Assembly: GCF_021869535.1 (NCBI RefSeq)
Contig: NW_026262734.1
Span: forward strand, 52,948,001 to 53,012,000
Source of the DNA: Mytilus californianus
Lineage: Eukaryota
Length of the DNA: 64,000 bases
Direction of reading: 5' to 3'
Positions 6,820 through 56,418 of this stretch are shown here, piece after piece (the stretch's first letter is position 1; each line of letters starts with the position of its first letter). Both the position numbers and the translations under genes were made by a program. A model generated the notes under the pieces. The model was not told the origin of the DNA. It was given only the letters and a program-made list of their open reading frames with translations, and made no database searches.

Positions 6820-7030
6820 GATGATAATGGATGACGACCAGCGATAAATAAAAAGAATATTCAGGACGATAACATGTAAATACAATATGAGTATTAACCC
6901 CGCTTTTAACTAGACTGACACGCTGAGTCGGTGTTTTTACACGTAAGTTCCCAAGATATTAGTTCGCACGAAGAAAAGTCACCCGACCCGGACACATTTC
7001 CGACTCTGAGCCGACCAGTCTGTGCTCCTA
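6820..7030 (-). mobile_element. 3' half of a tRNA-derived SINE (Meta/MESC-like core) interrupted by the Mutator element
   Basis: Minus strand reads AGCACAGACTGGTCGGCTCAGAGTCGGAAATGTGTCCG...CTCAGCGTGTCAGTCTAGTTAAAAGCGG...CGTCCTGAATAT, continuing the SINE head found at 56410-56555. Confidence 0.72.
7022..7030 (+). repeat. Left 9-bp target site duplication GTGCTCCTA
   Basis: Identical 9-mer at 56410-56418, each immediately outside a TIR. Confidence 0.93.
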
Positions 7031-7073
7031 GCACAAGGATAATAGTTACGCTGAACGGTGCCCACTGGTCACC
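7031..7073 (+). repeat. Left terminal inverted repeat (43 bp)
   Basis: GCACAAGGATAATAGTTACGCTGAACGGTGCCCACTGGTCACC; reverse complement of 56367-56409 with one mismatch at position 2. Confidence 0.95.
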
Positions 7074-7479
7074 TGAACAGAAACGGTTAAAATTGAGTCT
7101 ATACGCGACAAAAAATAGTACATGATTTCCGGTTTAAAGTGAAAGTACGTTACTAAGGGGATACTCAGTGCAGCATACTCAGTTTATAATTGCTGCTATA
7201 CAATACGGATATGAGCTTAATGCAAAGTTCTGGAATCACCATATTTCAAAGGATACTGTTGAGAGAGGTACAAAAAGTAAAAAATAATACACAAATAATC
7301 AATAATCATAATGATTCACTCAAAACAAACAATTGAAAATGCATAGAAGATTCATCTGTAACTCTATTAACGAGTGATATGGCTTATTTTTCAGAAAAAA
7401 AATAACCTAATGGCCTATATTGCACTCTCATGAAATATAACTAAAAAGATGGTATGCCTCGAACTCGGGTACCTTTAAA

Positions 7480-10400
7480 CTGCCATTGGTTACCTCTGGT
7501 CACCCTATACAGAAAATAATAGTGCATACAGTTACACTGGTCATTTGATACAAAATGCATAGTAACTTTATTAACCTTACTTCCTTTGCAGATAAATTTA
7601 CAGTGGTTCTTCTAATTAATTGACACATATATAGATATTGAATGGCCCTTAAACAGATATTGAATTTCTATACATCTTGTCACCTTTTACATAATTAATT
7701 GTGGTGACCTCTGGTCACCCAACACATGTATTGAATTGCAATAAACATTATAAGATATTGAATTTGGTTACCTCTTGTCAACCCGGCAAGCCTTCACAGA
7801 TATTGAATTTTGTTGCACCTTGTCACCTTTTACATAATTAATTGTGGTGACCTCTGGTCACCCTACACATATATTCTATTTTTTATCTTTAGACACTGTG
7901 CATAACTATTGAATTTATTTAACTTTAATAACCCTACTTAGATGTTTAATTTGGTAATATATGGACACCCTACCAAGATGTTGTATATGGTTAACCCTAA
8001 TCACTCTACAATGATGTTGAATATGGTTACCTCTGGGCACCCTACAAAGATATTGAATATGGTGACCTCTGGTCACCCTACCAAAATTTTGAACATGGTT
8101 CTTTCTGGTCACCCTACACATATATTGAATAAGGTTACCTCTAGTCATCTTACAAAGATATTGCATATGGTTACCTCTGGTCACCCTTCACATATACTGA
8201 ATATGGAAACCTCTGGTCACCCAACACAGATGTTTGAATTAGTTATAAACTTGCCATCCTACACAGATAATGATCACGGTTATATCTGGACATCTTTCAA
8301 ATACTTTTAATTGAGTTATGTTCGGTTTCAAAACCTACATACTGGCTTTAACCACCTCTTGTTACCCTAAATATGTCTTTATTTTGGTAATCTCTGGTTA
8401 CCCTACTAAGACAAATACAATCAAAACCAAGGAGTAAACAGATATACCAAAAGAAATTTACAACAACATTAAAAAAGTAAGGAACAACAGGAATCTTCTT
8501 AATCATGTCTTGAACGCTCCCATCGTGTGAGTTCTTTCTTAAGTCCGGTAATAATGAAAATGTACTGATGACTGTGCAAGAGTTTTAATATGATTAATCA
8601 TACATAAATTACTAAAATATTGAATTTGGTGACCTCTGGTCACCCTATACATATATGAACTTTAAATACCTCAAGTTACCCTACACAAATACTGAATTGG
8701 GTTACCTCTGGTCACCCTTCACATATTTTGAATGTGGTTACCTCTTATCTTACACAGATAGAAAACTTGATTACCTCTAGTCACCGTGCATAAATATTTA
8801 ATTTGGTTACCTATAGTTAGCCTACTTAAATATTTAATTTTGTAAACTTTGGTCATAAATTGAACGTGGTAACCTCTGATCAACGTACACAAATATTGAA
8901 AAAGGTAACCTCTGGTAAACAATTACAGATATTGAAAATGGTTACCTCTGGTCAACCTACAATAAATTGGCTTTTATTACCTATGGTTACAATTCATAAA
9001 TAATGAATTTGGTAAGCATCGGTTATCCCGGTTCACACTTTTGCGCTACTTTTATAATTAATATAGCAACTTCTGGTCGCTGTACACATACATTGAATTA
9101 TATTGCCATTGTCAACACACACATATATATATAGCAATTGCCTTTTTTGAATGTGGTAACCTCGGGTCGCCATACACAGATATAAAGTTATTTATCTTTA
9201 GACACCATACTTAAATATTGAATGTAGATACCTTTATTAAACCTACTAGTAAGCTGTTTATTTTGGTAATCTCTGGTCACACTGCCAAGATGATGAATGT
9301 GGTTACCTCTGGTCACCCTCCAAAGATATTGAATATGGTTACCTCTGGTCACCCAACCAAAACTTTGAATATGGTTACCTCTGGTCACCCTACACATATA
9401 TTGAATAAGGTTACTTCTGTTCACCCAACCAAAACTTTAAATATGGTTACCTCTGGTCACCCTACACAGATATGGAATAAGGTTACCTCTGGTCACTTTA
9501 CAAAGATATTGCATATGGTTATCTTTGGTCACCTAAAAAGATATTATATGTGGTAACCTCTGGTCTCCCTACACATATATTGACTATGGTTACCTCTGGT
9601 CACCCTACACATATTTTGAACATGGTTACCTCTGGTCACCTTACCAAAACTTTGAATATGGTTACCTCTGGTCACCTAACAAAGATATTGGATATGGTTT
9701 TTTTTGTCATCTAAAAAGATATTGAATGTGGTTACTTCTGGTCACCCTACAAAATATTGAGTATGGTTAGCTCTTGTTACTCTTCACAGATATTGAACAT
9801 GGTAACCTCTGGTCAACCTACAATAAATTGGCTTATGTTACCTATGGTTACAATTCATAAATAATGTATTTGGTTAGCATCTGTTATCCCGGTTCACACT
9901 TTTGCGCTTCTTTTATAATTAATATAGCAACTTCTGGTCGCTGTACACATACATTGAATTATGTTGCCATTGTCAACACATACATATATATATAGCAATT
10001 GCCTTTTTTGAATGTGGTAACCTCGGGTCGCCATACACAGATATAAAGTTATTTATATTTAGACACCATACATAAATATTGAATGTAGATACCTTTATTA
10101 AACCTACTAGTAAGCTGTTTATTTTGGTAATCTCTGGTCACACTGCCAAGATGATGAATGTGGTTACCTCTGGTCACCCTCCAAAGATATTGAATATGGT
10201 TACCTCTGGTCACCCTACAAAGATATTGAATAGGGTGACCTCTGGTCACCCAACCAAAACTTTGAATATAGTTACCTCTGGTCACGGTGCACCCTACACA
10301 TATATTGGATAAGGTTACTTCTGGTCACCCAACCAAAACTTTAAATATGGTTACCTCTGGTCACCCTACACAGATATTGAATAAGGTTACCTCTGGTCAC

Positions 10401-13400
10401 TTTACAAAGATATTGCACATGGTTATCTTTGGTCACCTAAAAAGATATTATATGTGGTAACCTCTGGTCTCCTTACACATATATTGACTATGGTTACCTC
10501 TGGTCACCCTACACATGTTTTGAACATGGTAACCTCTGGTCACCTTACCAAAACTTTGAATATGGTTACCTCTGGTCACCTAACAAAGATATTGGATATG
10601 GTTTTTTTTGTCATCTAAAAAGATATTGATTGTGGTTACTTCTGGTCACCCTACAAAATATTGAGTATGGTTAGCTCTTGTTACTCTACACAGATATTGA
10701 AAATGGTAACCTCTGGTCAACCTGCAATAAATTGGCTTATGTTACCTATGGTTACAATTCATAAATAATGTATTTGGTTAGCATCTGTTATCCCGGTTCA
10801 CACTTTTGCGCTACTTTTATAATTAATATAGCAACTTCTGGTCGCTGTACACATACATTGAATTATGTTGCCATTGTCAACACACACATATATATATAGC
10901 AATTGCCTTTTTTGAATGTGGTAACCTCTGGTCACCCTACACATATATTGAATAAGGTTACCTCTGGTCACCCAACCAAAACTTTAAATATGGTTACCTC
11001 TGGTCACACTGCCAAAATGATGAATGTGGTTACCTCTGGTCACCCTCCAAAGATATTGAATATGGTTACCTCTGGTCACCCTACACAGATATTGAATAAG
11101 GTTACCTCTGGTCCCCCAACCAAAACTTTGAATATAGTTACCTCTGGTCACACTGCCAAGATGATGAATGTGGTTACCTCTGGTCACCCTCCAAAGATAT
11201 TGAATATGGTAACCTCTGGTCACCCTACACATATATTGAATAAGGTTACCTCTGGTCACCCAACCAAAACTTTGAATATGGTTACCTCTGGTCACCCTAC
11301 ACATATATTGAATAAGGTTACCTTTGGTCACCCAACCAAAACTTTGAATATGGTTACCTCTGGTCACCCTACACAGATATTGAATAAGGTTAACTCTGGT
11401 CATTTTACAAAGATATTGCATATGGTTATCTTTGGTCACCTAAAAAGATATTATATGTGGTAACCTCTGGTCTCCCTACACATATATTGACTATGGTTAC
11501 CTCTGGTCACCCTACACATATTTTGAACATGGTAACCTCTGGTCACCTTACCAAAACTTTGAATATGGTTACCTCTGGTCACCTAACAAAGATATTGGAT
11601 ATGGTTTTTTTTGTCATCTAAAAAGATATTGATTGTGGTTACTTCTGGTCACCCTACAAATATATTGAGTATGGTTAGCTCTTGTTACTCTACACAGATA
11701 TTGAAAATGGTAACCTCTGGTCAACCTACAATAAATTGGCTTATGTTACATATGGTTACAATTCATAAATAATGTATTTGGTTAGCATCGGTTATCCCGG
11801 TTCACACTTTTTACGCTACTTTTATTATTAATATAGCAACTTCTGGTCGATGTACACATATATTAAATTATGTTGCCATTGTCAACAAAAATATATAGCA
11901 ATTGCCTTTTCTTAATGTAGTTACCTCGGGTCACCATACACATATATAAAATTATTTATCTTTAGACACCATGCATAAATATTGAATGTAGGTACTTTTA
12001 TTAAACCTACTAAGATGTTTATTTTGGTAATCTCTGGTCACACTACTAAGATGTTGAATGTGGTTACCTCTGGTCACCCTCCAAAAATATTGAATATGGT
12101 TACCTCTGGTCACCCTACAAAGATATTGAATATAGTAACCTCTGGTCAACCAACCAAAATTTTGAATATGGTTACCTCTGGTCACCCTACTAAAATTTTG
12201 AATATGGTTACCTCTGGTCACCTTACAAAGATATTGCATATGGTTATCTTTGGTCATCTAAAAAGAGTTTGAATGTGGTTACCTCTGGTCACCCTACACA
12301 TATATTAAGTATGGTTACCTCTGGTCACTCTACGCATAATTTGAACATGGTCACCTCTGGTCACCCACACAGATATTGGCTATGGTTACCTTTGGTCAAT
12401 CTATAAAAATTTGGCTTATGTTACCTATGGTTACAATTCATAAATAATGAATTTGGTTAGCAATGGTTATCTCGGTGCACACTTTTTGCGCTACTTTTAT
12501 AATTAATATAGCCACTTCTGGTCGATGTACACATATATTAAATTATGTAGCCGTTGTCAACAAATATATATAGCAATTGTTTTTTTTTAATGTGGTTACC
12601 TCGGGTCACCATACACAGATATACATTTATTTATCTTTAGACACCATGCATAAATATTGAATTTAGGTACCTTTATTAACCCTACTTAGATGTTTAATTT
12701 GGTAATCTCTGGTCACACTACAAAGATGTTAAATGTGATTACCTCTGGTCACCGTTCAAAAATATTGAATATGGTTACTTCTGGTCAACTTACAAAGATA
12801 TTAAATAGGGTGACCTCTGGTCACCCTACCACAATTGTGAATATGGTTACCTCTGGTCACCCTACACAGATATTGAATAAGGTTACCTCTGGACACCTTA
12901 CACAGATATTGACTAAGGTAACCTCTGGTCACCTTACAAAGATATTGCATATGGTTACCTCTGGTCACCCACACAGATATTGGCTATGGTTACCTCTGGT
13001 CATCCTACACAGATATTGAAAATGGTTACTTTTGGTCACCCTACAATAAATTGGCTTATGTTAACTATGGTGACAGTTCATAAGATGAATATCGTTGGTC
13101 AATTTAAAAGATATTGAATGTGGTTAACTCAGGTCATTCTACACAGATATTAAATATGTTTACCTCTGGCCCCCCTACACAGATTTCGAATTGGGTAACC
13201 CTTTCATATTATTGAATGAGATTACCTCCGGTCATCGTATACATATATTTACTTAAATTACCTCTGGTCACCCTTTACAGATTTGGAATGTGGTTACCTT
13301 TGGTCACCATACACAGGTATTAACTTTAGGTTCTGGTCACAATTCATAATTAATGAATCTTTATTAGCATCGATTATCTCGTTTCACACTATCCAGATGT
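7480..13400 (+). repeat. Left internal satellite: 36-bp unit (GGTTACCTCTGGTCACCCTACACAGATATTGAATAT-type) in ~0.7-1.0 kb higher-order repeats
   Basis: 36-bp period, seen as 12-aa periodic ORFs on both strands. The higher-order marker ATCCCGGTTCACAC and its variants occur at 9025, 9886, 10790, 11794, 12469 and 13376. Confidence 0.95.
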
Positions 13401-15147: not shown

Positions 15148-15422
15148 GGTCTGAAAAAGTTAATTTATAATTCTAAAGAGGTGAATGTCAACAACCTCAC
15201 AAAGAAATGAAAGAATCATAATTCATATTTTATTGTAAAATTCAGAGTTTACCCAGAATCATATCACTCTTAACAAATCTGTCAAATGATCCCTGAATAA
15301 ACAAGTAATATTTTCAATGATACGTTTTTATTACAATTGAATACACATAAGTATGTATAAACAATGTCATTTAGCTGTAAATTTGAAGTGAAGAAATGTT
15401 AACCTTATATTCTAATATTAAG

Positions 15423-16511
15423 GGAAATCATTCCAAACACCTGATGAACTACAAATTGCTATAAAGCAATCCATAGCTTCAAACGAGGAACAAACATTAA
15501 TAGTTGAGAGACTTAAGAGGAACTGTTCATCCCATGGCTTAGAATACAGAGGTCAAACACCAGGGAATGGGAATTGTTTTTTTGAAGCAATCACATGCCA
15601 GCTAGATAGAATTGGCGCAGACGTTATTGCTCCCGAACAATTAAGAACAAATGTTGTAAACTACATATCAACACATCCTAGTTTTGAGGTAAACTAATTT
15701 ACTTGTTAAATACATTCACTAATTATCAAACTCCTCCATGGACAGAAACATAAAGAATTAGTTGGACATGTTTTCAGGGGACAAATCAAAACCGTTGGCA
15801 ACAATAGTGGCGCATCAGCACAACTTAAATATATGATTTAAATCAGTTAAGAAGCTATTAACACACAAATACCATCAAAAATACTTCCGACAGAATATTA
15901 ATTTGGAATTGACGTAACTGCCCGTAATACCTGTGATTAATGCAATTTAATATTTAAAGATTTACAAACTGATAAAAGAATAAGCATCAGTTAAGACTTT
16001 CATATCAACCAGAATGCTTTTTTCTGCAGATGTTTAAATAAATCATTTACAGTTAATATAGTACAATGCTAAATAATAGGTATTGACAAAAAACAATAAA
16101 ATAAATAAAAAATGTATGTTATGATCATGATGATTTTTGATAAAATGTAGTTATAAAAGTATTTGTTTTGTATTAATCAATTTCAATGTACAGTAGTTAA
16201 TAAAGACTTATGTAAGTAGCTTTCTTTCAATCAATAGGGCAGTCAAGGCATTGTGTTATTAGAAAACTTCGTTGAAGACAATTTTCCGGACTACTGTGAC
16301 AGGATGTTACAGAATGGAGAGTACGCAGACCATGTTGTGGTCATTGGAATGTCCAGAATGCTACAGAGAGACATAGTTATTGTCACCAGTGCTCCCAGTA
16401 CCAATAATGAGGATAGTGTCCTTTGGGTAACTGGTTGTGATGGTTTTTCCGGTAATCCTATTCTTCTTGGGCACATTTTCGAAAACCACTACCAGTCACT
16501 CCAGCCAAAAG
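15423..16511 (+). CDS. UIM-like motif plus OTU cysteine protease domain (two exons) within the transposase gene
   Basis: DELQIAIKQSI (LxxAxxxS), then RGQTPGNGNCFFEAI (Cys 15575-15577), GEYADHVVVIGMS and ILLGHIFENHYQSL (His 16487-16489). Confidence 0.88.
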
Positions 16512-17989
16512 GTAACTGATAATAGAAATTATATAATTTATGATTATCTCTCAGAAAGAGATACCTTTACAGTTATAGTTTAAAGTAACGCATATGTAAA
16601 TCTATGTTAAAAAAATAATGTCTACGGTTGATAGTTGGGAAATATCTTATAACACGAGATATAGTTGTGGAATCTGTTAATCTAATGATTCCAATAAAAT
16701 TTGATAATTTGTTTAGATTATTTACAAAAAGTCATACTCTTCTTGTCTGACTTCATCGGGCATGATCACCTATTCCAATGACGTCATTATATAAAATTCA
16801 GAGGAAAGCAAAATATTTGTCGTCATTATTATATTTCGACTAAGGAAGGACTTCGATCAAGTGACCCACGTTTGGTAAAATGTTGATCAATATTGTGCTC
16901 AGAAAGGAATAAATACCATAGAATCAGTAAAATGTCCATATTTATATATTTGATATTTTATCAAATTGTTTTTGGCAAAACGAAATGAAATAAGTTTACT
17001 TTAACTTTGTTCTTCATTAGGCATTTTCACATTTTCGATAGGAGCGACCCTAATGAGTCTACGTAGACGGAACACATTTTTAAGCCTTATATCTTTGAAT
17101 TAGGTAGATCATCACTATATATCTGTATATCGCCATCTTGAATTGTAAAATAGCAGCACACAAGCGACAAAGTTCTTTATTTAAAACTGCAAATTTTGAG
17201 ACATAAATGCTATTCATTTTTAAAACTCTTGTTTGATAAATGTAAATAAGTGCATTATATCATTGAAAAAATAAGTGTTATTGTAAAAACCGGCTATCAG
17301 TCTTTGTTTGATTCAATTTGTCAACTGAGCTAATTAACGGAAGATAACTTATTTGGTGAATTTTCTTTAAAGGAATGATAATGAAATTTCTATTTTTCGC
17401 AAGAAAACGGGATTTATTTTCACCCTTTTTCTTTTGATTTTCTACTAAATTGTGGCTATGTATAAGAAAATTATGTCTGAGAAAAAAATTCAGTAATGAT
17501 CTACCTTAAATCGTTTTACGTTTTTTCACTGTAGACTGTTTTTGAAAAAGAAAAATATTAAAGGAAGTATTGTAAATGTGATATTTATATAAGTTTACTT
17601 TACATAATTTGATTACATAATTACTGCATTGATATCAATCAGCATTAGAGGCAAAGTTTTTCTAATTGGCAAATACATTCAGATGCAAAAAAGCTTTATT
17701 TTAACAGATAAACTAGTATTAATTATAAATTATTACGTTTTTTTGTTAATTGTAACGTTTATACAACAAATTTTAGGTGACAGTGGCAAACTTGATCACC
17801 ACACGAATGATAAGCATGCAACAAATGATGATAACCTTTTTATTCCTGTTGATGTGTGCAACGAAGAACTCAGCAACTATAACATGACACATGATGTTGA
17901 AGGTACAATATTGTTCCTTCGGAAATGTTCACTAGCCATACTTATCATCAGTGATTTTAAAATGATTTGAATAACTTATAATTAGCGGG

Positions 17990-21869: not shown

Positions 21870-22560
21870 GACTTCAGTTACCTCTGATAACTTGAACCAA
21901 ATCTTAATATTGACAAAGACTTTGCTACCTCTGATAACACTTAACATATACAGACTTTGGTAACCTCTGGTTAATGAACACATATATGGACCTGGGTCGC
22001 CACTTGTACCCTTAAATGTTTGTAGAATTTGATAATCACTTTTCACCATTTTGTTAACTTTGGTCACCTGAAACATATATATAATGATACACAGGTATTG
22101 ACTAGGGCTACCTTAATCGTACTTGTGTTTCCTATGTCTACTTTAGATATGTATATAATCTATATCCCTTTTGAAACCGTACACATATATTGACTTTGGT
22201 TACCACTGTTCACCGCAACTTTGGTCACATCTGGACAATTTAAAAAAAAATGATAGCTTTACACAAAGTATATCCTTGGTTCCGTCTTGTTACATCTACA
22301 TACTTTAGTAAAGTGAAATTTAAAGAGCATTTGGTATTTAGTACCTTACACTCGAAATGACGTTGGTTACCTCCATCACATTTATAGATACAGCCTTTGG
22401 TTTGTGGTTCTTTAAACTGATGCACTGTTTGCAAACCCAATGGTTCGTCTGTTAAAATCATTACTTTATTCACCATTTTAATCTTTTTACCAATCTGATT
22501 GTAAACATGCACTTTACACAGTAAATTAACTTTGGTGTTTTCTGGTCAAATTATACAGAT
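21870..22560 (+). repeat. Degenerate block of 36-bp satellite motif in a transposase intron
   Basis: GACTTTGGTAACCTCTGGT, ACTTTGGTCACC and ACATATATTGACTTTGGTTACC, in the same orientation as the left array. Confidence 0.65.
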
Positions 22561-23222: not shown

Positions 23223-26200
23223 GGGAGTACAGCCATTAGTAATTATTTACCAGAATGAAGCACAAAGAAAAAGAATGGTGAAACTAGCAGAAAATGTGGT
23301 GTTTTTAGATGCTACATATAAAGGTATATACTTGTATATAATCATGGAAATTTCAATTTAAAATATTGATACGTTTAAAAGAATTGAACTGTGTGACAAT
23401 AAACTTACAACATGTTTTTTGTTTGTTTTAAGGATTAACTGCCTATGGTTATTCATTCTATGCTCTTGTTGCAAGAGATGAACAGCAAGGCCGAGGCACT
23501 CCTCTTTCGTACTGTATCTCGTCAGATGATACTGGTGAAGTTGTCAAAATATTTCTGAGATCTCTGAAGACTACGGCTGAAAATCATGGATTTGATTTCC
23601 GTCCAAGGTTTGTGGGTATCAAAGTTGACAATATTTCGAATTCAATATCATTGCTTATTAACACTTTTCATTTTCGTCTTATTATTTGTTTACAATTAGT
23701 AACATTATTCGGAGTCAACATCAAATCTGATATGGATATAAAAGATAAATAAATACCATTCAATTATATGTTTTAATTAATTTGGCTGTAAAAATTACAG
23801 GTTAAACTATGACATTATTCACATATTCGTGCAGTGATAGTTATTTGAAATGACAAATACACAATGCTATGAAAGATTCATCTAAAGAAACATTTTTTCA
23901 TGCATATCAAAATTAATACAATTAAGGTCCACAATAATTTCAGTTGAATTTTGGCAAAGAATATTAGATAAATAATTTTTGCATAATAATATTTTTCTAA
24001 TGGACTAATGAAACTTACAAACACATCAATTTCCTTAAAATCTTTTGAGTGTGATCTATAGCAAGGCTTTAAAACCAAAGCATTTAAGATTAAAGCATAG
24101 TCAGGTTTATACATAACATAATAATTAAAGCTTTTTTAGGCTTGTTTCCAAACTTTTTAATCACAAATTAAAAATCTAATTGATATAAAAAAAAAAGAAT
24201 TTACATAATTATTTACAAATTAACAAATAGTATTATAGAATAAAACCAATATGAGATAAAGATATAGATTGTTGATACTGCAGTGTTACATTTTGTTTAC
24301 TAGATCTTTTATGGTAGACAGAGATACCAAAGAAATCAGCGCAATTAATGAAGTATTCCCAAACAGCTCTGTTTTACTTTGCTGGTTTCATGTTTTACAG
24401 GTATTATATTATTCAATATATGTATCATACATTTTACCTTATTCTTTATGGGAAAAAAATCAGTTATTAAATGAGAGTTATTCTGTGAAGTTTCACTCTT
24501 TTGGATCAATAAGTATTAATTGCATTGGATTTAACATTTTATATCTTTTTTTTGTGTTTATAAGCTTGAGGTCAGTTTTGAATTAATAAATAGACTCTTT
24601 CGCATTAATACTTTCATAGATCAAATATTATCTTGTTGAAAAATAATTAGTCATGATATATTCAAGACAATGTTTAATTATTATTATCTTTAAGACATGA
24701 ACTAAATATAAATGATTTGATTTACAGGCTGTGTACAGATTTTTGAATAAAAAAGAATCTGGTGTATCAGGACCCATGCACGCACATACCAGAAAAAAAG
24801 TTATTGACTATATTAGAACTATGAAAATATGTACCAAGGTAATCAAACGTGATAGTTAAGACAAATAAAATATAATGAACCTATGATACCACAGTGAAAT
24901 ATAATAATTTTTAAATTGGTCAATAATTTTGAGTTGGTCCTGACAAATTCAAATAATGTATTCGAATATTTAATATGTACTAGGTGAATGTTAATTTACA
25001 TAGTATAACTTGACCTGCTTCTGATAATAACAGTTTTATATGCAGAGGATGTGAAACATTGTTAAAAAATTAATCACGAGTGTGTTGCCTCACAATGAAA
25101 CACGATTGGTTATTGATATGTTTATATTATAAGAAAAATCCCTGTAGAAATGAAACCTCAGTGGGATCTTTTTCTCCTTTTCCAACATTGTAATTGTTTT
25201 AATATCAAAATCATATCAACAAGATTTTTCAAATAGAGTCAATTAAAACGCAATAATAATAATAATAAAAAATACAATCAATGAATTTTGGTTGATAAAA
25301 GATGAAAAAAAAACACTGAAACATATAGAAATGAATCTCTATTGAATTAAAGCAGTAAAATAATTTGGAAAGTACAAATAGTTGCTTAATGCGATTTAAA
25401 GATCTTACCTATAAATATACAATGCTTATGAGTACACGCGTGTTTAATCTATAAAATCTGATTTTATACTCAAAAGAAATGTGTCAATATAATTTTTCCT
25501 CAGAAAGAAGACTTTTCTCAAAAAGTTTAAATGTTGCAAGAGAAGATGCCTTCCAAACAAATAGCAGACTACTTGTTAGACAACTGGTGTACTGACAAGT
25601 GGGGATGTCGATGGGCCAACTATGGAAGACATTTTTTTCATGAAGATCAAGATACAAATAACTTAGTTGAAAGGTTATTAATACATTTTATTACTATACA
25701 CCTTATATTTTACAAGATCGAAATTTTAAGCATCATCTAATTATCATCTGTTTGATAATAGTAACTAAGTATATTTTATTTTGGGGATAAATTTTCTGAA
25801 CTGTCTCTGTTTTTATGACCTGATTTATAAAAAGTATTACACTTTGTCTAAATCCTACTTCTTCATGGGTAACCAAAGACAAAGCAGGATATAAACTTTA
25901 CAATTTTTAACAATATGGAGAGGATTTTTGCCGTTCTTTCATGATAGGGTTATGCAAATTTAATACAAATATCATAATTGTCAATGCAAGTCGATAATTA
26001 CATAAAAGCAGACAAAATGAAAAAATGTAGTCTAGCAAAACCTGATGTGTATGAGGATATTAAAACAAAAAAATATAATGCTACTTATAACATTCAAATG
26101 TTAACACATTAATATTTTATGTACTTTCTATTTGTACATTCAAATATAAATCATAAATTCAAAGTCCTTAACATTTTGTCATTTTCAGGTTTTTCCTGGG

Positions 26201-26497: not shown

Positions 26498-27832
26498 CTA
26501 TCTGGATGAACTCGCAAAGATTGGTCGCCTGAAAAATATGGGAGGACAAAGGAGAGACAAAAGTAAATTGACAGCAGAGAATATGCTCAAGGCAGGACTC
26601 GACCAAACTGTGCAATGGACTTCATCCACAGAATGCACTGTTCCATCACAGACAGCATTTGGGACGATTTATAATGTGGACATTGTCAATGAAGTGTGCA
26701 ATTGTCCAGCAGCAACAACAAGAGGTATTTTTTTAGCATCTTAAGTCAGTCCAACAATGTTTAAAAGTACACCATCAAGTATGAATTGTTATAATCAAGA
26801 TTAGTAATTTCGGGTACCGTATATGGTTCCCGGAAATGCTTATCCTTCTAAAGCACCTAATTTCACTTCAGGTATTCAGTGGAATTCGTGTTGTTTATTA
26901 TTGTTTTTTACTGTTGTTGTAAATGTCTTATGGTTTTATGAGTCTCCTCGGTTTTGATTGTTTTTGTCTTCCAACAAGGCATTATCAACCGTCATAAGGT
27001 TATACAAGTGCAAATAATCATTTTCCTCATCAAATTTTCTAAAACAATGCGATCCAATTTAAGTAAATCTTTACTCAACGTTCATTAGTGGTTTTGTTTA
27101 AAGTTTGTACAATTGAAAGTGAACCATAAAAGTACAAGTTATTTATGTTCCATTCTCTACTATTTTTCAGGAATGTGTAAGCATGTTCATTTAGCTGAAT
27201 TGATTGCTTCTAAAAGGAACATCGACCTTACTGTAGAGCGCAGATCAGAAGCAATGGATGTATTTAATGCAGAACAATATTTTTATGACAGTGATAACAA
27301 CCAGGTAGAGGTTTTGTCAAGATTGGGAAATGTATCAGTTGTTAATTTGACCTCTTTCAAATGTACATGTTTTGCCAATAGCCATGGTAAACATTGTGTT
27401 TGTGTGATGGTAGCAAAACTGGTAGTTCCATCACCTGACATAGAGTCTACCTCAATTGATGAAACAAAACAACAATTAATTGAAGACAAAGAAACAACCG
27501 ACCAGGCTATTAAAAGAAAAATTGAGGAAATCAATTTATATGTAAACAATAAAAATTTCCAGACAATTGACGTGAAAAAAAAGAAAGCTATTTGTCAAGC
27601 ACTCACAACGGCATTACATATTTGTAAGACAACCAACTTTTCCAAAACAACAAGAAAGCGAAAGCAGCAACCGCTGTTTCCAAGCAGAAAATCCAAAAGT
27701 CCAAAAACTGATCATGACTATTCAGTAAGCCGAAAGTGTGTTCTGAAAAAACGGGGGCGTAAAGTTAATGATGATGGCAGTTTCAAATCTACGCACAGAA
27801 AGAAAGGATCCATTCGTAAACCATTTCAATGA
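26498..27832 (+). CDS. C-terminal transposase exons: two SWIM-type zinc fingers and a basic tail
   Basis: VCNCPAATTR|GMCKHVH across the 26724/27171 splice; FKCTCFANSHGKHCVC; basic NLS-like RKRK and KKRGRK; stop at 27830-27832. Confidence 0.85.
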
Positions 27833-31318: not shown

Positions 31319-31329
31319 CTTGTTAAGTT

Positions 31330-34300
31330 GACCACATGTAACCAATTCAATATTTTTGTAAAGTAATCTCAACAGGAAAATGAAATTACTTTTCAATCAA
31401 ACCTAAGTAGCATTTTTACAAATATCAATAACAAGTTTTAAGTTCAAAAAGAATGATAGTTTCAGTATCATAAAACTTAATGAACTTATCCATCATGATT
31501 AAATGCATACATACCACTCTCATCTACATTTTCTGTTGACTTCTAAAAATAGAAGATAAAAATTATAATGATTGTATTAGGAAATCAATTGATTTATCAA
31601 AAATTATCTAATAATGATAAGTATAAATTGTCTACATAATCAATTGTAAAAATCCTCTTGACAAAGTAAGAAATTTTAATTATTTTCTAAGATTTGTTTT
31701 TTAGACGACTCTGAAAGACAATGTACATTTTTTAATGGTTATTAATATATTGAAATTAATATAACAATATAACATATTCTCCCTGAACCAAGAATGTATA
31801 TCTAACCTGATCTTCATCTTTTTTCTAGATCTTCGGTTGTCTAACATTATCTACTAATGAAAAGAAATAAAACCATGAACCATTCAAATGTAAATGTTGA
31901 TATTTTTTTGCAATTTATATTAACATTAATTGTTTCATTTTCTGTTATAAAAGACTAAATAAAACAAGTTTTGTTTGCGTAAGTGTGTCCAGAGGTTACC
32001 ATATTTCATATCAACATAAGGTGATCAGAGGTGACAAAATCTGAAATCTACAGAAGGTGACCAGAGGTAACCAAATCCCATGTATGAATAAGATGACCAG
32101 ATGTAACCAAATCAATTATCTGCATAAGGTGACCAGAGGAAGCCAAATCCGAAATATGCAGAAGATGACCAGATAATTACAATATCTGCATAAACTTAGG
32201 TAACCAAAACTTATATTTAAATCAGGTGACCAACAGTAACAAAACCCTATTATAACTTTTAAAAGTGACCAGTAATTACCAGATACCATATCTTGGGAAG
32301 ATGACCACATGTATCCAAAATTAAGAATTTTGTAAGGAAATTCTTAAAGAATATTGAATTTACTTTTCAATCAAACCTAAGTAGCCGTTTTAACAAAAAA
32401 TGATAACCAGTTTTGTGTTAGAATAGAATGATAATTTCAGTATTATAAAAACTTCATGTACTTATGCATCATATATAATGATTATATATCACAAATTAAA
32501 TGCGTACATACCTCTTTCATCTACATTTTCTAGTGACTTCTGAAAAAAAAGATAACAAATACAATAATCGTATAAGGAAATCAATTGATTTATCAAAAAT
32601 ATCTACAGAGGATAAGTATCAATTATCAACTGAACATGCTCTTGGCAACGTTTGCAAATTAAATCATTCTCTAACGTTTGTTTTATAGATGATCATGGTA
32701 GACAAAGTTCATTCTGTTAATTGTAATAAAATATTAAAAGTAATATATAATACTTTTCTATATTCTTGTTGAACCCATGATGTATATCAAACCTGTTTTT
32801 CTTCTTTTTTCCCTCTCTTTGATTTTCTAGCATGTTCTAAAATGATAAAAAAAACACAACATGACCAGTTGTAGGTAAATATTGATGACAAGAAATAACC
32901 AAATTCGAATAATACATAGGGTGGCCAGAGATTTCCAATATATGCATGAAATGAACGGAGGTAAACAAATCCAATATCGTCGTAAGGTGACCAGAGGTAA
33001 GTAAACACATTCAATATCGTCGTTAGGTGACCAGAGGTAACCAAATTCTATATGTTGTTCAGATGACCAGAGGTTACCATATACCATATCTTGTAAAGTT
33101 GACAACATGTAGCCAATTTAAATTTTTATAAGGTTATCCCAAAAGAAAAATGTTTTTTTTAATTAAACCTTAAATGCCATTTCACAAAATTCGTAACAAG
33201 TTTAAAGTTTCAATAGAATAATAGTTTCAGTATTATATAGACACAAGGCGCTTATCCATCATAAATAAGAATTATATTTAACAAATTTAATGCATACATA
33301 CCTCTTTTATCTACATTTTCTAGTGACTGAAAAAGAAGATAAAATATATAATGATTACATTAGGAAATCAATTGATTTATCCAAAATAATATAATGAGGG
33401 TAAGTAAAAATTGACTTAATAATCAACTTTAAATGCTCTTGTCAACGTTTGCAAGTTCAAGCATTTTCTAAGATTTGTTTTTAAAAGATCAGGATAGACA
33501 ATGTTCATTCTGTTGAGATCATTAATATTTTAAATGTAATATGCAATACAATTCTATAGTCTTGCTGAACCAGTAATGCATATCAAACCTGTTCTTGTTC
33601 TTTTTTCCTTCTCTTCGATTGTCTTACATTTCCTACAAATAATAACAAAAAATAACATGACTTATGTTTTGATGACCAGAGTTAATTAAATCTGAAATCT
33701 GCATAAGGTGACCAAAGGTCCTCAAATCCAATATCTGCATAAGGTGACCAGAGGTTCCCAAATCCAATATCTGCATAAGGTGACCAAAGGTCCCCAAATC
33801 ATATATCTGCATAAGGTGAACAGATATATAACAAATCAAATTTCTTCATAGAGTCACCAGAGGTCCCCAAATCGGAAATCTGCATAAGAAGACCAGAGGT
33901 CCTCAAATCCAATATCTGCATAAGGTGACCAGGAACTCTAATCCAATATCTGCATAAGGTGAACAGAGGTCCCAAAATCCAATATCTGCATGAGGTGACC
34001 AGATTTATCCCAATCCAATATCTTCATAAGGTGACCAGAGGTCCCCAAATCCAATATTTGCATAAAGTGACCAGAGGTCCTAAAATCCAATATCTGCATA
34101 AGGTGACCAGAGGTCCCCAAATCCAATATCTGCATAAGGTGACAAGAGGTTACTAAATCTAGTATCTGCATTAGATGACCAATGGTAATCCGATTTCATA
34201 TCATGTTAAGATCACTAGAGATAATCTGATACCATATATGATAAAATTGATCACTTATAGCTAATTAAATATTTTTCTAAGTTAATCCAAAGAGAAAAAG

Positions 34301-37300
34301 AAATTTTTCAATCAAACCTAAGTAGCGATTTTAAAGCTATCGATAACAAGTTGTAAGTTTAAATAGAAATTTAGTTTCAGTATCATATAGACGTAATGAA
34401 CCTATCCATCATACTAAAAAAATGATAAAATAAATACAAACCACTTTCATCTTCATTTTCTGTTGACTTCTGAAAAAAGAAGTTAAATATTAAATAATCG
34501 TATAGGAAATCAACTGATTTATCCAAAGGATCTAATGAAGATACGTATAAATTGACTTCGTTATCGGCTCTTGACAACGCAAGCAAATTCAATTATTTTT
34601 AAGATTTATTTCTAAATGATCATGGAAGATAATGTACATTTTTTCTGTTCAGTGTTACTTAGATAGTAAATATAATGTTATAGTATTCTATATTTTGAAC
34701 CAATGATATATACAAACCTGTTCTTCTTTTTTCACCCTCTTCAAATTTCTCACATTTTCTACAAATGATAAAAAAAACTCAACATTTAAAAAAGAAATTG
34801 TGGTATTATTGCCAATGAGACAACTGTTCACAACAAACCAAATGACACAGAAATTAACAAGTATAAGTCACTGTACGGCCTTCAACAATGAGCAACGTCC
34901 ATACCGCATAGTCAGTTATTAAAGGCCCGGAAATAAGAAATGTAAAATAATTCAAACGATCATACATCTAAGACTACATATGACCAATTTTTGTAAAATT
35001 TAATGACCAGTGAATAACAAAATCCGAAATCTGAAAAAGGTGTCAACTGTCAAGAGAATTCCAATAACAACAGAAAGTGACCAAAGATAACTAAATACAG
35101 TATCTGCTTCAGGTGATCAGTGTTAACACAATTCTATATCATTTTAAGGTTGCTTAGGGTACTCAAATACCATATCTGGGAAAGTTGACCATATGCAGCC
35201 AATTAAATATACCAAAAATAATTAATTTCAATCAAACCGAAGAAGCCATTTTACAGCTATCGATAACAAGTTTTAAGTTCAAAAAGAATAATAGTTGCAG
35301 CATTATATAAACATAGTGTATGTTTTCATCATATTAAAGGTTTGATACAATAAATTAAATGCATACATACCACTTTCATCTACATTTTCTGAGGACTTCT
35401 AAAAAAAAGAAGATAAACATCTGATATTTGTATTAGTAAATTCAATTTTATTTATCCATAATTATCTTATGAGGTTAAGTAAAAATTGACAACATTTTCA
35501 ACTGTCAATGCTCTTGGCAATGTTTGCAAGGTCAATGATTTTCAAAGATTTGTTCTTTAAAAGATCAGGATAGACAATGATCATTCTGTTGAGTGCTATT
35601 AATATTTTAAATGTAATATGCAATACAATTCTATAGCCTTGCTGAACCAGTAATGCATATTAACCTTTTCTTGTTCTTTTTTTCCTCTCTTCGATTGTCT
35701 TACGTTTCCTACAAATGATAAAAAACATAACATGACTTATGTTTTGATGACCAAAGGTAACAAAATCCAATATTTACATAGGGTGACCAGAGGTCACCAA
35801 ATCCAATATTTACATAAGGTGACCAGAGGTCACCAAATCTAATATTAACATTAGGTGACCAGAAGTCACCAAATCCAGTATTTACATAAGATGAACTGAG
35901 GTCACCAAATCCAATATATGAATAAGGTGACTAGAAGTTACTCCATTCTAGCATATTAAGGCAAACAGAGGTTAACAAATCCAAACTGGTTAAGATGACC
36001 ACATGTAATCAACTTAAATATTTGTGAAAGGTAATCAAGAAACAAAAAAAATGATTAGTTCAATCGAGCCTAAGTGGCCATTTTACCAGAAACGATTGCA
36101 AGTTTCAAGTTCAAAAAGAATAATAGTTGCAGCATTATATAAATATAGTGTATGTTTCCATCATATTAAAAGTTTGATACAATGAATTAAATGCATACAT
36201 ACCACTCTCATCTACATTTTCTGAGGACTTCTGAAAAAAAGAAGATAAGTATATGATAATTGTATTAGTAAATTCAATTTTATTTATCCAAAAGTATCTT
36301 ATGAGGATCAGTTTTATTTTATTTAATTATCAACTGTCCGTGCTCTTGGCAATGTTTGAAAGATCAATGATTTTTCTTTAATTTGTTTGTAGATGATCAT
36401 GAAAGATAATGATCATTGTGTTAAGTTTTATCGGTACATTAAACTTAATGTAATAATATTCTATATTCTTGTTGAATCCATAATGTATATCAAACCTGTT
36501 CTTCTTCTTTTTTGTCTTTCTTTGATTGTCTCAAATTTTCTACAAATGATATGAAAAACATCAACTAGTTGTATGCAAATGTTATTTACCAGAGATAACC
36601 AAATCTGAAAACTGCATAAGGTGACCAGAGGTAACCAAATCCAATATTAACATAAGGTGACCAGAGGTCACCAAATCCTATATTTCCATAAGATGACCAG
36701 AGGTAACCAAATCCAATATATGAATAAGGTGACTAGAAGTTACCCCATTCTAGCATATTAAGGCCAACAGAAGTTAACAAATCCCATTTCTGGCTAAGAT
36801 GACCACATGATATCAACTTAAATATTTGTGTAAGGTAATCAAGAAACAAAAAAAATGATTAGTTCAATCGAGCCTAAGTGGCCATTTTACCAGAAACGAT
36901 TGCAAGTTTCAAGTTCAAAAAGAATAATAGTTGCAGCTTTATATAAGTATAGTGTATATTTCCATCATATTAAAAGTTTGATACAATGAATTAAATGCAT
37001 ACATACCACTCTCATCTACATTTTCTGAGGACTTCTGAAAAAAGAAGATAAATATATGATAATTGTATAAGTAAATTCAATTTTATTTATCCAAAAGTAT
37101 CTTATGAGGATCAGTTTTATTTTATTTACTTATCAACTGTCCGTGCTCTTGGCAATGTTTGAAAGATCAATGATTTTTCTTTAATTTGTTTGTAGATGAT
37201 CATGAAAGATAATGATCATTGTGTAAAGTTTTATCGGTACATTAAAGTTAATGTAATAATATTCTATATTCTTGTTGAATCCATAATGTATATCAAACCT

Positions 37301-40300
37301 GTTCCTCTTCTTTTTTGTCTTTCTTTGATTGTCTCAAATTTTCTACAAATGATATGAAAAACATCAACTAGTTGTATGCAAATGTTATTTACCAGAGATA
37401 ACCAAATCTGAAAACTACATAAGGTGACCAGAGGTAACCAAATCCAATATTAACATAAGATGACCAGAGGTCACCAAATCCTATATTTCCATAAGATGAC
37501 CAGAGGTAACCAAATCCAATATATGAATAAGGTGACTAGAAGTTACCCCATTCCAGCATATTAAGGCCAACAGAAGTTAACAAATCCCATTTCTGGCTAA
37601 GATGACCACATGATATCAACTTAAATATTTGTGTAAGGTAATCAAGAAACAAAAAAAATTATTAGTTCAATCGAGCCTAAGTGGCCATTTTACCAGAAAC
37701 GATTGCAAGTTTCAAGTTCAAAAAGAATAATAGTTGCAGCATTATATAAATATTGTGTATGTTTCCATCATATTAAAAGTTTGATACAATGAATTAAATG
37801 CATACATACCACTCTCATCTACATTTTCTGAGGACTTCTGAAAAAAGAAGATAAGTATATGATAATTGTATTAGTAAATTCAATTTTATTTATCCAAAAG
37901 TATCTTATGAGGATCAGTTTTATTTTATTTAATTATCAACTGTCCGTGCTCTTGGCAATGTTTGAAAGATCAATGATTTTTTTTCTTAAATTTGTTTGTA
38001 GATGATCATGAAAGATAATGATCATTGTGTAAAGTTTTATCGGTACATTAAACTTAATGTAATAATATTCTATATTCTTGTTGAATCCATAATGTATATC
38101 AAACCTGTTCTTCTTCTTTTTTGTCTTTCTTTGATTGTCTCAAATTTTCTACAAATGATATGAAAAACATCAACTAGTTGTATGCAAATGTTATTTACCA
38201 GAGATAACCAAATCTGAAAACTACATAAGGTGACCAGAGGTAACCAAATCCAATATTAACATAAGGTGACCAGAGGTCACCAAATCCTATATTTCCATAA
38301 GATGACCAGAGGTAACCAAATCCAATATATGAATAAGGTGACTAGAAGTTACCCCATTCTAGCATATTAAGGCCAACAGAAGTTAACAAATCCCATTTCT
38401 GGCTAAGATGACCACATGATATCAACTTAAATATTTGTGTAAGGTAATCAAGAAAAAAAAAATGATTAGTTCAATCGAGCCTAAGTGGCCATTGTACCAG
38501 AAACGATTGCAAGTTGTAAGTTCAAAAAGAATAATAGTTGCAGCATTATATAAATATTGTGTATGTTTCCATCATATTAAAAGTTTGATACAATGAATTA
38601 AATGCATACATACCACTCTCATCTACATTTTCTGAGGACTTCTGAAAAAAGAAGATAAGTATATGATAATTGTATTAGTAAATTCAATTTTATTTATCCA
38701 AAAGTATCTTATGAGGATCAGTTTTATTTTATTTAATTATCAACTGTCCGTGCTCTTGGCAATGTTTGAAAGATCAATGATTTTTCTTAAATTTGTTTGT
38801 AGATGATCATGAAAGATAATGATCATTGTGTAAAGTTTTATCGGTACATTAAACTTAATGTAATAATATTCTATATTCTTGTTGAATCCATAATGTATAT
38901 CAAACCTGTTCTTCTTCTTTTTTGTCTTTCTTTGATTGTCTCAAATTTTCTACAAATGATATGAAAAACATGTACTAGTTGTATGCAAATGTTATTTACC
39001 AGAGATAACCAAATCTGAAAACTGCATAAGGTGACCAGAGGTAACCAAATCCAATATTAACATAAGGTGACCAGAGGTCACCAAATCCTATATTTCCATA
39101 AGATGACCAGAGGTAACCAAATCCAATATATGAATAAGGTGACTAGAAGTTACCCCATTCCAGCATATTAAGGCCAACAGAAGTTAACAAATCCCATTTC
39201 TGGCTAAGATGACCACATGATATCAACTTAAATATTTGTGTAAGGTAATCAAGAAACAAAAAAAAATATTAGTTCAATCGAGCCTAAGTGGCCATTTTAC
39301 CAGAAACGATTGCAAGTTTCAAGTTCAAAAAGAATAATAGTTGCAGCATTATATAAATATTGTGTATGTTTCCATCATATTAAAAGTTTGATACAATGAA
39401 TTAAATGCATACATACCACTCTCATCTACATTTTCTGAGGACTTCTGAAAAAAGAAGATAAGTATATGATAATTGTATTAGTAAATTCAATTTTATTTAT
39501 CCAAAAGTATCTTATGAGGATCAGTTTTATTTTATTTAATTATCAACTGTCCGTGCTCTTGGCAATGTTTGAAAGATCAATGATTTTTCTTAAATTTGTT
39601 TGTAGATGATCATGAAAGATAATGATCATTGTGTAAAGTTTTATCGGTACATTAAACTTAATGTAATAATATTCTATATTCTTGTTGAATCCATAATGTA
39701 TATCAAACCTGTTCTTCTTCTTTTTTGTCTTTCTTTGATTGTCTCAAATTTTCTACAAATGATATGAAAAACATCAACTAGTTGTATGCAAATGTTATTT
39801 ACCAGAGATAACCAAATCTGAAAACTACATAAGGTGACCAGAGGTAACCAAATCCAATATTAACATAAGGTGACCAGAGGTCACCAAATCCTATATTTCC
39901 ATAAGATGACCAGAGGTAACCAAATCCAATATATGAATAAGGTGACTAGAAGTTACCCCATTCTAGCATATTAAGGCCAACAGAAGTTAACAAATCCCAT
40001 TTCTGGCTAAGATGACCACATGATATCAACTTAAACATTTGTGTAAGGTAATCAAGAAACAAAACAAATGATTAGTTCAATCGAGCCTAAGTGGCCATTG
40101 TACCAGAAACGATTGCAAGTTGTAAGTTCAAAAAGAATAATAGTTGCAGCATTATATAAATATTGTGTATGTTTCCATCATATTAAAAGTTTGATACAAT
40201 GAATTAAATGCATACATACCACTCTCATCTACATTTTCTGAGGACTTCTGAAAAAAGAAGATAAGTATATGATAATTGTATTAGTAAATTCAATTTTATT

Positions 40301-56366: not shown

Positions 56367-56409
56367 GGTGACCAGTGGGCACCGTTCAGCGTAACTATTA
56401 TCCTTGTCC
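56367..56409 (-). repeat. Right terminal inverted repeat (43 bp)
   Basis: GGTGACCAGTGGGCACCGTTCAGCGTAACTATTATCCTTGTCC. Confidence 0.95.
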
Positions 56410-56418
56410 GTGCTCCTA
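56410..56418 (+). repeat. Right 9-bp target site duplication GTGCTCCTA
   Basis: Identical to 7022-7030. Confidence 0.93.

What the first reader, a model, noticed from the sequence alone, without database searches (positions are those of the whole stretch)
7480..13400. 36-bp satellite built on the TIR inner motif and a double GGTNACC palindrome
Seen: the unit core GGTTACC-TCT-GGTCACC is two interrupted palindromes 3 bp apart, and CTGGTCACC equals the last 9 bp of the TIR. Well over 100 units, many degenerate, fill 5.9 kb. Established: subterminal repeats of Foldback-like and CACTA elements bind transposase. Inference: an amplified array of transposase-binding sites, showing a DNA transposon seeding satellite DNA.
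Basis: partly seen in the sequence, partly recalled or inferred. Interest (0 to 1): 0.7.

Follow-up and report, generated by a model that had tools for sequence, protein, structure and literature searches.

The report
Repeat arms of giant mussel Mutator transposon
The 5.9-kb stretch of 36-bp repeats is real and is one repeat arm of a young 49-kb Mutator-type jumping gene in a mussel; this design is already known from insects, and the same repeat lies mostly outside this element.

Summary
Window 7480-13400 is a degenerate 36-bp tandem array of about 105 recognisable units. Its core is GGTTACC-TCT-GGTCACC.

The array lies 0.4 kb inside the left 43-bp terminal inverted repeat (TIR) of a 49.4-kb element (7031-56409) with a 9-bp target duplication and a MULE transposase exon. 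The inner 17 bp of the TIR match the core at 14 of 17 positions, not only the last 9. Mirror-oriented arrays lie at 32.0-44.3 kb and 51.3-51.9 kb.

All 15 left ends found in the genome carry the array. Arm length varies from 4.05 to 9.7 kb (left) and 6.9 to 12.7 kb (right) among copies 98-100% identical. In the one copy I compared, the difference is two ~1-kb higher-order repeat (HOR) blocks.

- A transposase-binding role is plausible by analogy with the mosquito MULE Muta1, but it is untested here.
- Within arrays the core is no better conserved than the spacer. Only the consensus core is constant across arrays.
- "Transposon seeding a satellite" is not shown. About 85-90% of the 4,448 exact cores lie outside this family, in long free composite arrays and other repeats, and units cluster by array.

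This is a new member of a known kind (Muta1, Rehavkus, Foldback-type). The scan has met other satellite-carrying transposons in this genome, but not this 36-mer.

The parts
7022..7030 (.). Left copy of the 9-bp target-site duplication GTGCTCCTA
   Evidence: Same 9-mer at 56410-56418. Matching 9-bp duplications were read directly for three other pairs of ends, each with different flanks.
7031..7073 (+). Left TIR (43 bp). Its inner 17 bp (7057-7073) are a core-like motif, GGTGCCCACTGGTCACC.
   Evidence: 41-bp perfect inverted match to 56367-56407. 14/17 identity to the array core. 34 TIR hits in the genome, giving 16 paired copies plus 2 solo ends.
7074..7479 (+). About 0.4 kb between the TIR and the first canonical unit, not organised as 36-bp repeats
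   Evidence: Sequence reading. 98-99.5% identical in other copies.
7480..13400 (+). Left repeat arm: 36-bp units (core plus a 19-bp spacer with ATATTG), about 105 recognisable cores, organised in ~0.9-1.0-kb higher-order blocks
15422..16516 (+). OTU-like protease exons of the transposase gene (context)
Evidence: Weak Pfam OTU hits, E = 0.043 and 4.7e-4.
21876..22214 (+). Four degenerate core-like motifs inside the transposase gene region
   Evidence: Fuzzy core search, 2-4 mismatches
24260..24583 (+). Exon with the end of the MULE transposase domain
   Evidence: PF10551, E = 6.6e-6, 26.9 bits against a cut-off of 27.6. Found only in about 13 family copies in the genome.
27089..27829 (+). Large open stretch that begins with a CKH-containing motif resembling the second half of a SWIM zinc finger
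   Evidence: Translation. My reading only; there is no Pfam hit.
32015..36500 (-). Right-side arrays, part 1: short runs of reverse-oriented 36-bp units separated by other sequence
36588..42474 (-). Right-side arrays, part 2: about 7.3 copies of an 803-bp higher-order unit (97.6% alike). Each holds about 540 bp of other sequence plus about 7 36-bp units.
42771..44336 (-). Right-side arrays, part 3: dense 36-bp array (44 copies) containing a 1,028-bp duplication
51290..51920 (-). Small right array, 4.5 kb from the right TIR. It includes two units with a TIR-like core, GGTGCCCTCTGGTCACC (51583-51599 and 51854-51870).
56367..56409 (-). Right TIR. The inner core-like 17-mer is at 56367-56383. The next 19 bp inward match the unit spacer at 9/19.
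56410..56418 (.). Right copy of the 9-bp target-site duplication

Best explanation
The 36-bp array is the left repeat arm of a young, autonomous, 49.4-kb Mutator-like transposon. Each unit carries a 17-bp, nearly palindromic core: two GGTNACC half-sites one helical turn apart. This core is homologous to the inner half of the element's TIR. The same units lie in mirror orientation on the other side of the transposase gene. Shown here: the anatomy, membership of the element, presence in all copies, and rapid gain and loss of ~1-kb higher-order blocks between near-identical copies (unequal exchange or replication slippage). Inferred: the cores are reiterated binding sites for the element's transposase or an accessory protein. 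They would raise the local protein concentration and help recognise and pair two ends 49 kb apart, as shown for the 12-bp subterminal repeats of the mosquito MULE Muta1. The repeat family is older and wider than this element. Most copies lie in free composite satellites and in other repeats, so element and satellites draw on a shared repeat library. The direction of transfer is unresolved.
For: - Element anatomy: TIR, 9-bp duplication and MULE exon.
- The TIR inner 17-mer matches the core at 14/17, and intermediate variants sit in the small right array.
- Orientation is mirrored: cores lie mainly on the + strand at 7-13.4 kb and mainly on the - strand at 31-44.5 and 51-52 kb.
- All 15 left ends carry 11-20 cores in their first 1.5 kb.
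- Arm spans differ by kilobases among copies 98-100% identical. The one copy compared lacks two ~1-kb higher-order blocks.
- Sister copies on C99 and C2 share a TIR mutation and equal arm lengths but have different flanks, so arrays move intact.
- The two arms differ at 9.0 of 19 spacer positions on average, yet their consensus cores agree at 16/17. The one difference is the central N of the first half-site.
- Precedent: more subterminal repeats strengthen Muta1 transposase binding and increase excision (PMC5499845).
Against: - No binding or transposition data exist for this element.
- When units are anchored on the spacer motif, the core is no better conserved than the spacer (0.74 vs 0.76 left, 0.80 vs 0.80 right).
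- The main right arrays are 12-24 kb from the right TIR, and the arms are only about 70-75% complementary. This is unlike classical foldback termini.
- No DNA-binding zinc finger was identified upstream of the DDE domain.
- About 85-90% of exact cores lie outside the family, so the motif is not specific to this transposon.
Confidence: 0.55

Rival explanations
1. Captured satellite. A pre-existing mussel 36-bp satellite was taken up by, or became the ends of, an ancestral MULE. The TIR inner motif then derives from a satellite unit rather than the reverse, and the arrays are cargo with no role in transposition.
For: Most exact cores (about 85-90% of 4,448) are outside the family. Free arrays reach 10-21 kb, have their own higher-order structure with a 113-bp satellite, and lack the TIR and transposase. 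Free-array spacers are central: they are nearer to each arm (7.5 and 8.4) than the arms are to each other (9.0). Other transposons in this genome carry satellites as cargo (earlier notes, untested).
Against: The core-like motif is part of the TIR itself at both ends, and units point inward on both sides. The 113-bp partner satellite and the other parts of the free arrays are absent from the element. Both arms have been kept in every full copy.
Confidence: 0.25
2. Neutral by-product. TIR-adjacent sequence expanded by slippage or abortive gap repair and persists because it is harmless. Consensus constancy of the core reflects homogenisation, not function.
For: There is no within-array excess conservation of the core. 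Units are highly degenerate (65% matches). Array length is very unstable.
Against: The consensus core is constant across arms and across free arrays that have diverged at about 40-50% of spacer positions. Homogenisation within one array cannot explain agreement between arrays that do not exchange units.
Confidence: 0.15
3. The arrays act mainly on chromatin or silencing, for example as small-RNA sources, heterochromatin nucleation sites or insulators around the transposase gene, rather than in end recognition.
For: The arrays bracket the transposase gene on both sides. Tandem repeats often attract silencing (general knowledge).
Against: Only 1 read was laid from about 6% of one RNA-seq run. 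That library would not show small RNAs, so this is a weak test either way. There is no positive evidence.
Confidence: 0.05

Closest known systems
Muta1 (Aedes aegypti MULE, a 'type 2 foldback' element; PMC5225508, PMC5499845)
   Same: MULE with 8-9-bp target duplication. Its ends are built from a terminal motif followed by tandem subterminal repeats. Repeat number varies among natural copies. The repeats are experimentally shown to strengthen transposase binding and raise excision.
   Different: Muta1 is 3.2 kb with nine 12-bp repeats inside a 145-bp TIR, and its two ends are 97% alike. Here the element is 49 kb and the units are 36 bp. The arms are 4-13 kb, strongly diverged from each other, and on the right side far from the TIR. 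Muta1 has a FLYWCH finger; none was found here.
Rehavkus elements and their satellites in Tribolium (10.1101/2024.12.02.626372; PMC6446971)
   Same: MULE-related, 9-bp target duplication, variable numbers of tandem repeats in inverted termini. The same repeats also occur as long free satellite arrays (up to 80 kb in T. castaneum).
   Different: Rehavkus has so far been reported from arthropods and annelids and has a PHD finger in its transposase. Here the host is a mollusc and the transposase looks MULE/SWIM-type with an OTU domain. PHD and phylogenetic placement were not tested. In Tribolium the TE-to-satellite direction is supported by a sibling-species comparison; here the direction is unresolved.
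Drosophila Foldback (FB) and Tetris elements
   Same: Inverted arms made of short tandem repeats that can contribute to satellite DNA. This rests on my own knowledge and on the citation of Dias et al. 2014 in 10.1101/2024.12.02.626372.
   Different: Their arms are near-identical inverted arrays that reach the termini and can snap back. Here the arms are about 70-75% complementary and the spacer consensus differs at 7 of 19 positions.
Subterminal transposase-binding repeats of plant En/Spm (CACTA) and Ac/Ds
   Same: Reiterated short motifs near the ends bound by element-encoded protein (established knowledge, not tested here).
   Different: Those are different superfamilies. Their motifs are dispersed over a few hundred bp, not arranged in kilobase-scale tandem arrays.
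Transposon-associated satellite-like repeats of bivalves (Helentron- and MITE-borne; PMC7492417, PMC3879986, PMC8268682)
   Same: In bivalves, tandem repeats are carried and spread by DNA transposons.
   Different: Those carriers are Helitron-type elements or small MITEs with 100-200-bp monomers. Here the carrier is a giant MULE with a 36-bp monomer tied to its TIR.

Membership tests
Mutator-like element (MULE) DNA transposon | Terminal inverted repeats | tested here: met
   43-bp TIR, 42/43 matching, with a perfect 41-bp stretch. It recurs at 34 ends in the genome.
Mutator-like element (MULE) DNA transposon | Target-site duplication of 8-11 bp (typically 9) | tested here: met
   9-bp duplication in the window and in three other paired copies read directly.
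Mutator-like element (MULE) DNA transposon | MULE-type DDE transposase | tested here: inconclusive
One exon hits PF10551 at E = 6.6e-6, 26.9 bits, which is 0.7 bits under the Pfam cut-off and covers only the last third of the profile. A SWIM-like CKH motif lies downstream. The full spliced protein was not assembled.
Foldback-type element (arms of tandem repeats) | Inverted arms composed of tandem repeats in mirror orientation | tested here: met
   Cores lie mainly on the + strand at 7-13.4 kb and mainly on the - strand at 31-44.5 and 51-52 kb.
Foldback-type element (arms of tandem repeats) | Arms nearly identical and reaching both termini, able to snap back | tested here: not met
   The best inverted matches are 70-75% complementary over at most 270 nt. 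Arm spacers differ at 9.0/19 on average. The main right arrays are 12-24 kb from the right TIR.
Rehavkus | 9-bp target duplication plus a subterminal minisatellite | tested here: met
   Definition taken from PMC6446971.
Rehavkus | PHD finger in the transposase; placement with Rehavkus transposases in a tree | not tested
No Repbase sequences were available.
Satellite DNA in the strict sense (long free tandem arrays) | Long arrays not bounded by transposon ends | tested here: not met
   This locus lies inside the transposon. Sister variants of the unit do form free arrays of 10-21 kb elsewhere: C2:32.07M, C24:27.16M, C24:53.87M, C35:16.04M.
Transposase-binding subterminal repeats | Specific binding by the element's transposase, and an effect of repeat number on transposition | not testable with these tools
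   Indirect support only: TIR/core homology, mirrored orientation and a constant consensus core.

The most novel reading that the evidence does not exclude
The 17-bp double-GGTNACC core is a protein-recognition module shared by the MULE's TIR, its kilobase arms and the free 10-21-kb composite satellites. The transposase, or a host protein derived from one, would then also bind those satellites genome-wide. The satellites could act as sinks that titrate transposase, or the very large arrays could be what allows a 49-kb element to pair its ends and move.
Probability: 0.12. Interest if true: 0.65.

Novelty: new member of a known kind. Interest (0 to 1): 0.33.

Why it matters
The locus is a clean, well-delimited case in a mollusc of a transposon whose end motif is reiterated into kilobase arrays. 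There are 16 paired, near-identical copies whose arm lengths differ, which gives a natural series for testing whether repeat number affects mobility of very large DNA transposons. It also shows that a single locus cannot support the claim that a transposon seeds a satellite: here the repeat family is mostly outside the element. The general phenomenon is already documented in mosquito, beetles and flies, and transposon-borne repeats are known in bivalves.

Tried and rejected
1. Core conservation as evidence of selection. A first tally showed the core at 0.93 against the spacer at 0.82. That was selection bias, because units had been picked by their core. Anchored on the spacer motif ATATTG, the difference vanishes.

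2. Free arrays as non-autonomous family members. No terminal TIR motif (up to 6 mismatches in 26 nt) was found in 140 kb around five free-array regions. There is no similarity to non-array parts of the element apart from a 112-bp dispersed repeat. There is no transposase exon nearby. The inner TIR 21-mer with up to 3 mismatches occurs only in family copies, plus 2 unrelated hits.

3. WRKY-like, FLYWCH or other zinc-finger DNA-binding domain. Pfam scans of most open stretches of 55 aa or more in 13.5-31.8 kb, and regular-expression searches, gave nothing. Exons may split such a domain, so this is not proof of absence.

4. Fetching all copies whole. Arm lengths were obtained from anchor coordinates instead.

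5. Literature search for the exact core returned no paper. No paper on a Mytilus MULE with such arrays was found.

6. RNA support. One read was laid from about 6% of one RNA-seq run. This is uninformative for small RNAs.

7. Empty-site evidence from organism C contigs was set aside. The insertion flank is itself a high-copy repeat: word depth in 6850-7049 is 569-6,153.
Full report
**What is there**

Tandem Repeats Finder reports period-36 arrays on the + strand at 7962-8239, 8615-8961 and 9264-13191 (109 copies, 65% matches). It reports the reverse complement of the same unit at 32015-44336 and 51737-51865.

The exact 17-mer GGTTACCTCTGGTCACC occurs 49 times in the window against 0 in shuffles. 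Thirty-one are on + at 7488-12969 and 18 on - at 32056-51834. Allowing 4 mismatches gives 105 non-overlapping cores in 7400-13450. Of these, 68 are followed by the next core at exactly 36 bp. GGTNACC occurs 131 times in 7480-13400 but only twice in the 14.6 kb outside the element.

The array is not uniform. It contains a non-repeat island near 8400-8610. It is built from ~0.9-1.0-kb higher-order blocks that are 88-90% alike.

**The element around it**

A perfect 41-bp inverted repeat lies at 7033-7073 / 56367-56407. With two more bases it is a 43-bp TIR at 7031-7073 / 56367-56409. It is flanked by the 9-bp direct repeat GTGCTCCTA at 7022-7030 and 56410-56418. The element is 49,379 bp long.

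An exon at 24260-24583 matches the end of the Pfam MULE transposase domain (E = 6.6e-6, just under the cut-off). Weak OTU matches lie at 15422-16516. This agrees with the earlier notes on this window.

The TIR occurs 34 times in the genome, as 16 pairs spanning 9.4-50 kb plus two solo ends. Flanks differ between copies, and the three other pairs I read directly have matching 9-bp duplications. Ends are 98-99.5% identical to the window's, and internal anchors are 99-100% identical. This is a young family that has transposed.

**Relation between TIR and unit**

In fact the whole inner 17 bp of the TIR, GGTGCCCACTGGTCACC, match the core at 14 of 17 positions (chance about 1e-6).

At the right end the next 19 bp also resemble the spacer (9/19). 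Units with the intermediate core GGTGCCCTCTGGTCACC occur twice in the small right array (51583-51599 and 51854-51870) and in the same place in other copies. So the TIR is an outer 26-bp terminal part followed by a diverged copy of the repeat core.

The two GGTNACC half-sites start 10 bp apart. The 17-mer as a whole matches its own reverse complement at 13/17 positions (direct reading).

Units point inward on both sides. With up to 4 mismatches, cores lie mainly on + at 7-13.4 kb and mainly on - at 31-44.5 and 51-52 kb.

**The other copies**

All 15 left ends in the genome carry 11-20 cores within their first 1.5 kb.

I measured arm length as the distance from the TIR to a unique anchor just past the left array.

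| Arm | Range among copies | In the window |
|---|---|---|
| Left (TIR to anchor) | 4,051-9,711 bp, 15 copies | 6,417 bp |
| Right (between two unique anchors) | 6,854-12,700 bp, 10 copies | 12,700 bp |

I tiled one other left arm (C2:7.55M) from fetched loci. It is colinear with the window's except that it lacks about 2 kb, which equals two ~1-kb higher-order blocks. That difference therefore arose by unequal exchange or slippage between higher-order blocks.

Two sister copies (C99 and C2:15.2M) share a TIR mutation and have the same arm lengths (5,729/5,728 and 8,421/8,421). They sit in different flanks, so arrays are carried intact through transposition.

**The right side**

The right-hand arrays are heterogeneous:
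- Short runs lie at 32.0-36.5 kb.
- About 7.3 copies of an 803-bp higher-order unit lie at 36588-42474. The copies are 97.6% alike, and each has about 540 bp of other sequence plus about 7 units.
- A dense array lies at 42771-44336.

These arrays lie 12-24 kb from the right TIR. Only the small array at 51.3-51.9 kb is near it.

The two arms have different spacers: consensus CTACAAAGATATTGAATAT on the left and TTATGCAAATATTGGATTT on the right. The consensus spacers differ at 7 of 19 positions. Unit to unit, the mean spacer distance between arms is 9.0/19. The best inverted matches are only 70-75% complementary. This is not a classical snap-back structure.

**Is the 36-mer confined to the element? 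No**

The exact core occurs 4,448 times in the genome, against 0 for the reversed control. Full copies hold 23-49 each, so the family accounts for roughly 10-15%.

I fetched five other regions. They hold arrays of 10-21 kb of a sister unit, with spacer near TTACACATATATTGACTTT or ATACACATATATTGACTAT. These arrays have four properties:
- They are interleaved with a 113-bp satellite in higher-order units of about 1.65 kb that are about 92% alike, with orientation switches.
- They have no terminal TIR motif.
- They have no similarity to the non-array parts of the element.
- They have no transposase exon nearby.

A different dispersed repeat of more than 3 kb, with three copies about 99% alike, carries an eight-unit run.

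Units cluster strictly by array. Nearest neighbours of left-arm units are left-arm units (60 of 62), and the same holds for right-arm units (53 of 53). Free arrays on different chromosomes intermix with each other but not with the element.

This young family therefore did not seed those arrays recently. Whether an ancestor did, or whether the element took up a pre-existing satellite, is open.

**Is the core under constraint?**

A first tally suggested so (0.93 against 0.82). That was selection bias, because units had been chosen by their core. When units are anchored on the spacer motif ATATTG, core and spacer are equally conserved within arrays (0.74 vs 0.76 left, 0.80 vs 0.80 right).

What remains is a consensus-level contrast. 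All arrays, in the element and free, have the same consensus core and the same ATATTG. The rest of the spacer differs at about half its positions between arms. This fits a functional core but does not prove one.

**Reads**

Contigs of runs from two differently coded organisms (A and B) carry an identical variant of the left end. A third organism (C) carries a version with more differences and small gaps (for example 5 base differences plus a 14-bp gap in one 210-bp contig). Canonical units are far deeper than the unique part in A and B but not in C. One RNA-seq run, sampled at about 6%, laid a single read.

**Comparison with what is known**

- The closest tested system is Muta1, a mosquito MULE. 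Its TIR is a terminal motif plus nine 12-bp subterminal repeats. More repeats strengthen transposase binding, are needed for cleavage, and raise excision in yeast (PMC5499845; PMC5225508).
- Rehavkus elements are MULE-related and have a 9-bp duplication and subterminal minisatellites (PMC6446971). In Tribolium they carry repeats that have also grown into satellites of up to 80 kb (10.1101/2024.12.02.626372).
- Transposon-borne satellite-like repeats are well documented in bivalves on Helitron-type elements and MITEs.
- Other agents of this scan report satellite-carrying TIR and foldback elements with 178-190-bp units elsewhere in this genome (untested by me).
- I found no paper containing this core, and none on a Mytilus MULE with such arms.

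**Verdict**

The binding-site reading is the most likely mechanism (about 0.55) but rests on analogy and anatomy. The satellite-seeding claim is not shown, and for this family specifically it is contradicted. This is a new member of a known kind. Its notable features are its size, its strongly diverged arms and the natural series of arm lengths.

Noticed in passing
window 36588-42474: An 803-bp higher-order repeat (about 7.3 copies, 97.6% alike). Its non-36-mer part contains, on the - strand, a 28-nt segment flanked by AG and GT like a mini-exon. About 500 bp of the unit is 71-76% similar to window 31315-31800.
   Followed up: partly
L031 1-5849, L033 4186-7172, L043 2602-3410: A 113-bp satellite (also with 224/449-bp periods) is interleaved with the 36-bp units in free composite arrays with ~1.65-kb higher-order units about 92% alike and with orientation switches.
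   Followed up: partly
L046 237-306 (G000:C1:68489174-68489243): A short telomere-like run (units close to CCCTAA / CCTAAA) sits inside another 36-mer array region. Cores there are + at 68.489-68.491 Mb and - at 68.534 Mb, which could mark another large element.
   Followed up: no
L045, L048, L049 (G000:C1:22.28M, 103.05M, 117.90M): A different dispersed repeat of more than 3 kb (copies about 99% alike) carries an eight-unit run of the 36-mer. The same 83-bp string also occurs on C35, C57 and C92.
   Followed up: partly
window 17985-18096: A 112-bp dispersed repeat inside the transposase gene region recurs (83-94%) inside or at the edge of the free arrays: L035 5730-5840, L039 4475-4585, L042 3490-3600, L043 2501-2611.
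   Followed up: no
window 5394-5652 and 56727-56997; 6850-7049: The insertion site is itself repetitive. The two flanks share a 73% direct match, and the left flank has very high word depth in public runs. An apparent empty site in another organism's contigs is therefore not decisive.
   Followed up: partly
window 21876-22214: Four degenerate + oriented core-like motifs lie inside the transposase gene region, next to a 47-bp tandem duplication at 21759-21852.
   Followed up: no
G000:C99:53199979-53244680 and G000:C2:15236150-15280831: Two copies share a TIR point mutation and identical arm lengths but have different flanks and target duplications. They are sister insertions from one source.
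   Followed up: partly
runs X1 (organism A) and X8 (organism B) on window 7044-7705: Runs labelled as two different organisms hold an identical 663-bp contig of the element's left end, with the same two differences and one gap. Either the labels cover one species complex or the element is shared very recently.
   Followed up: no
window 53933-54039: A 29-bp tandem repeat (3.6 copies, 88% matches) lies in the region of the element's second gene.
   Followed up: no
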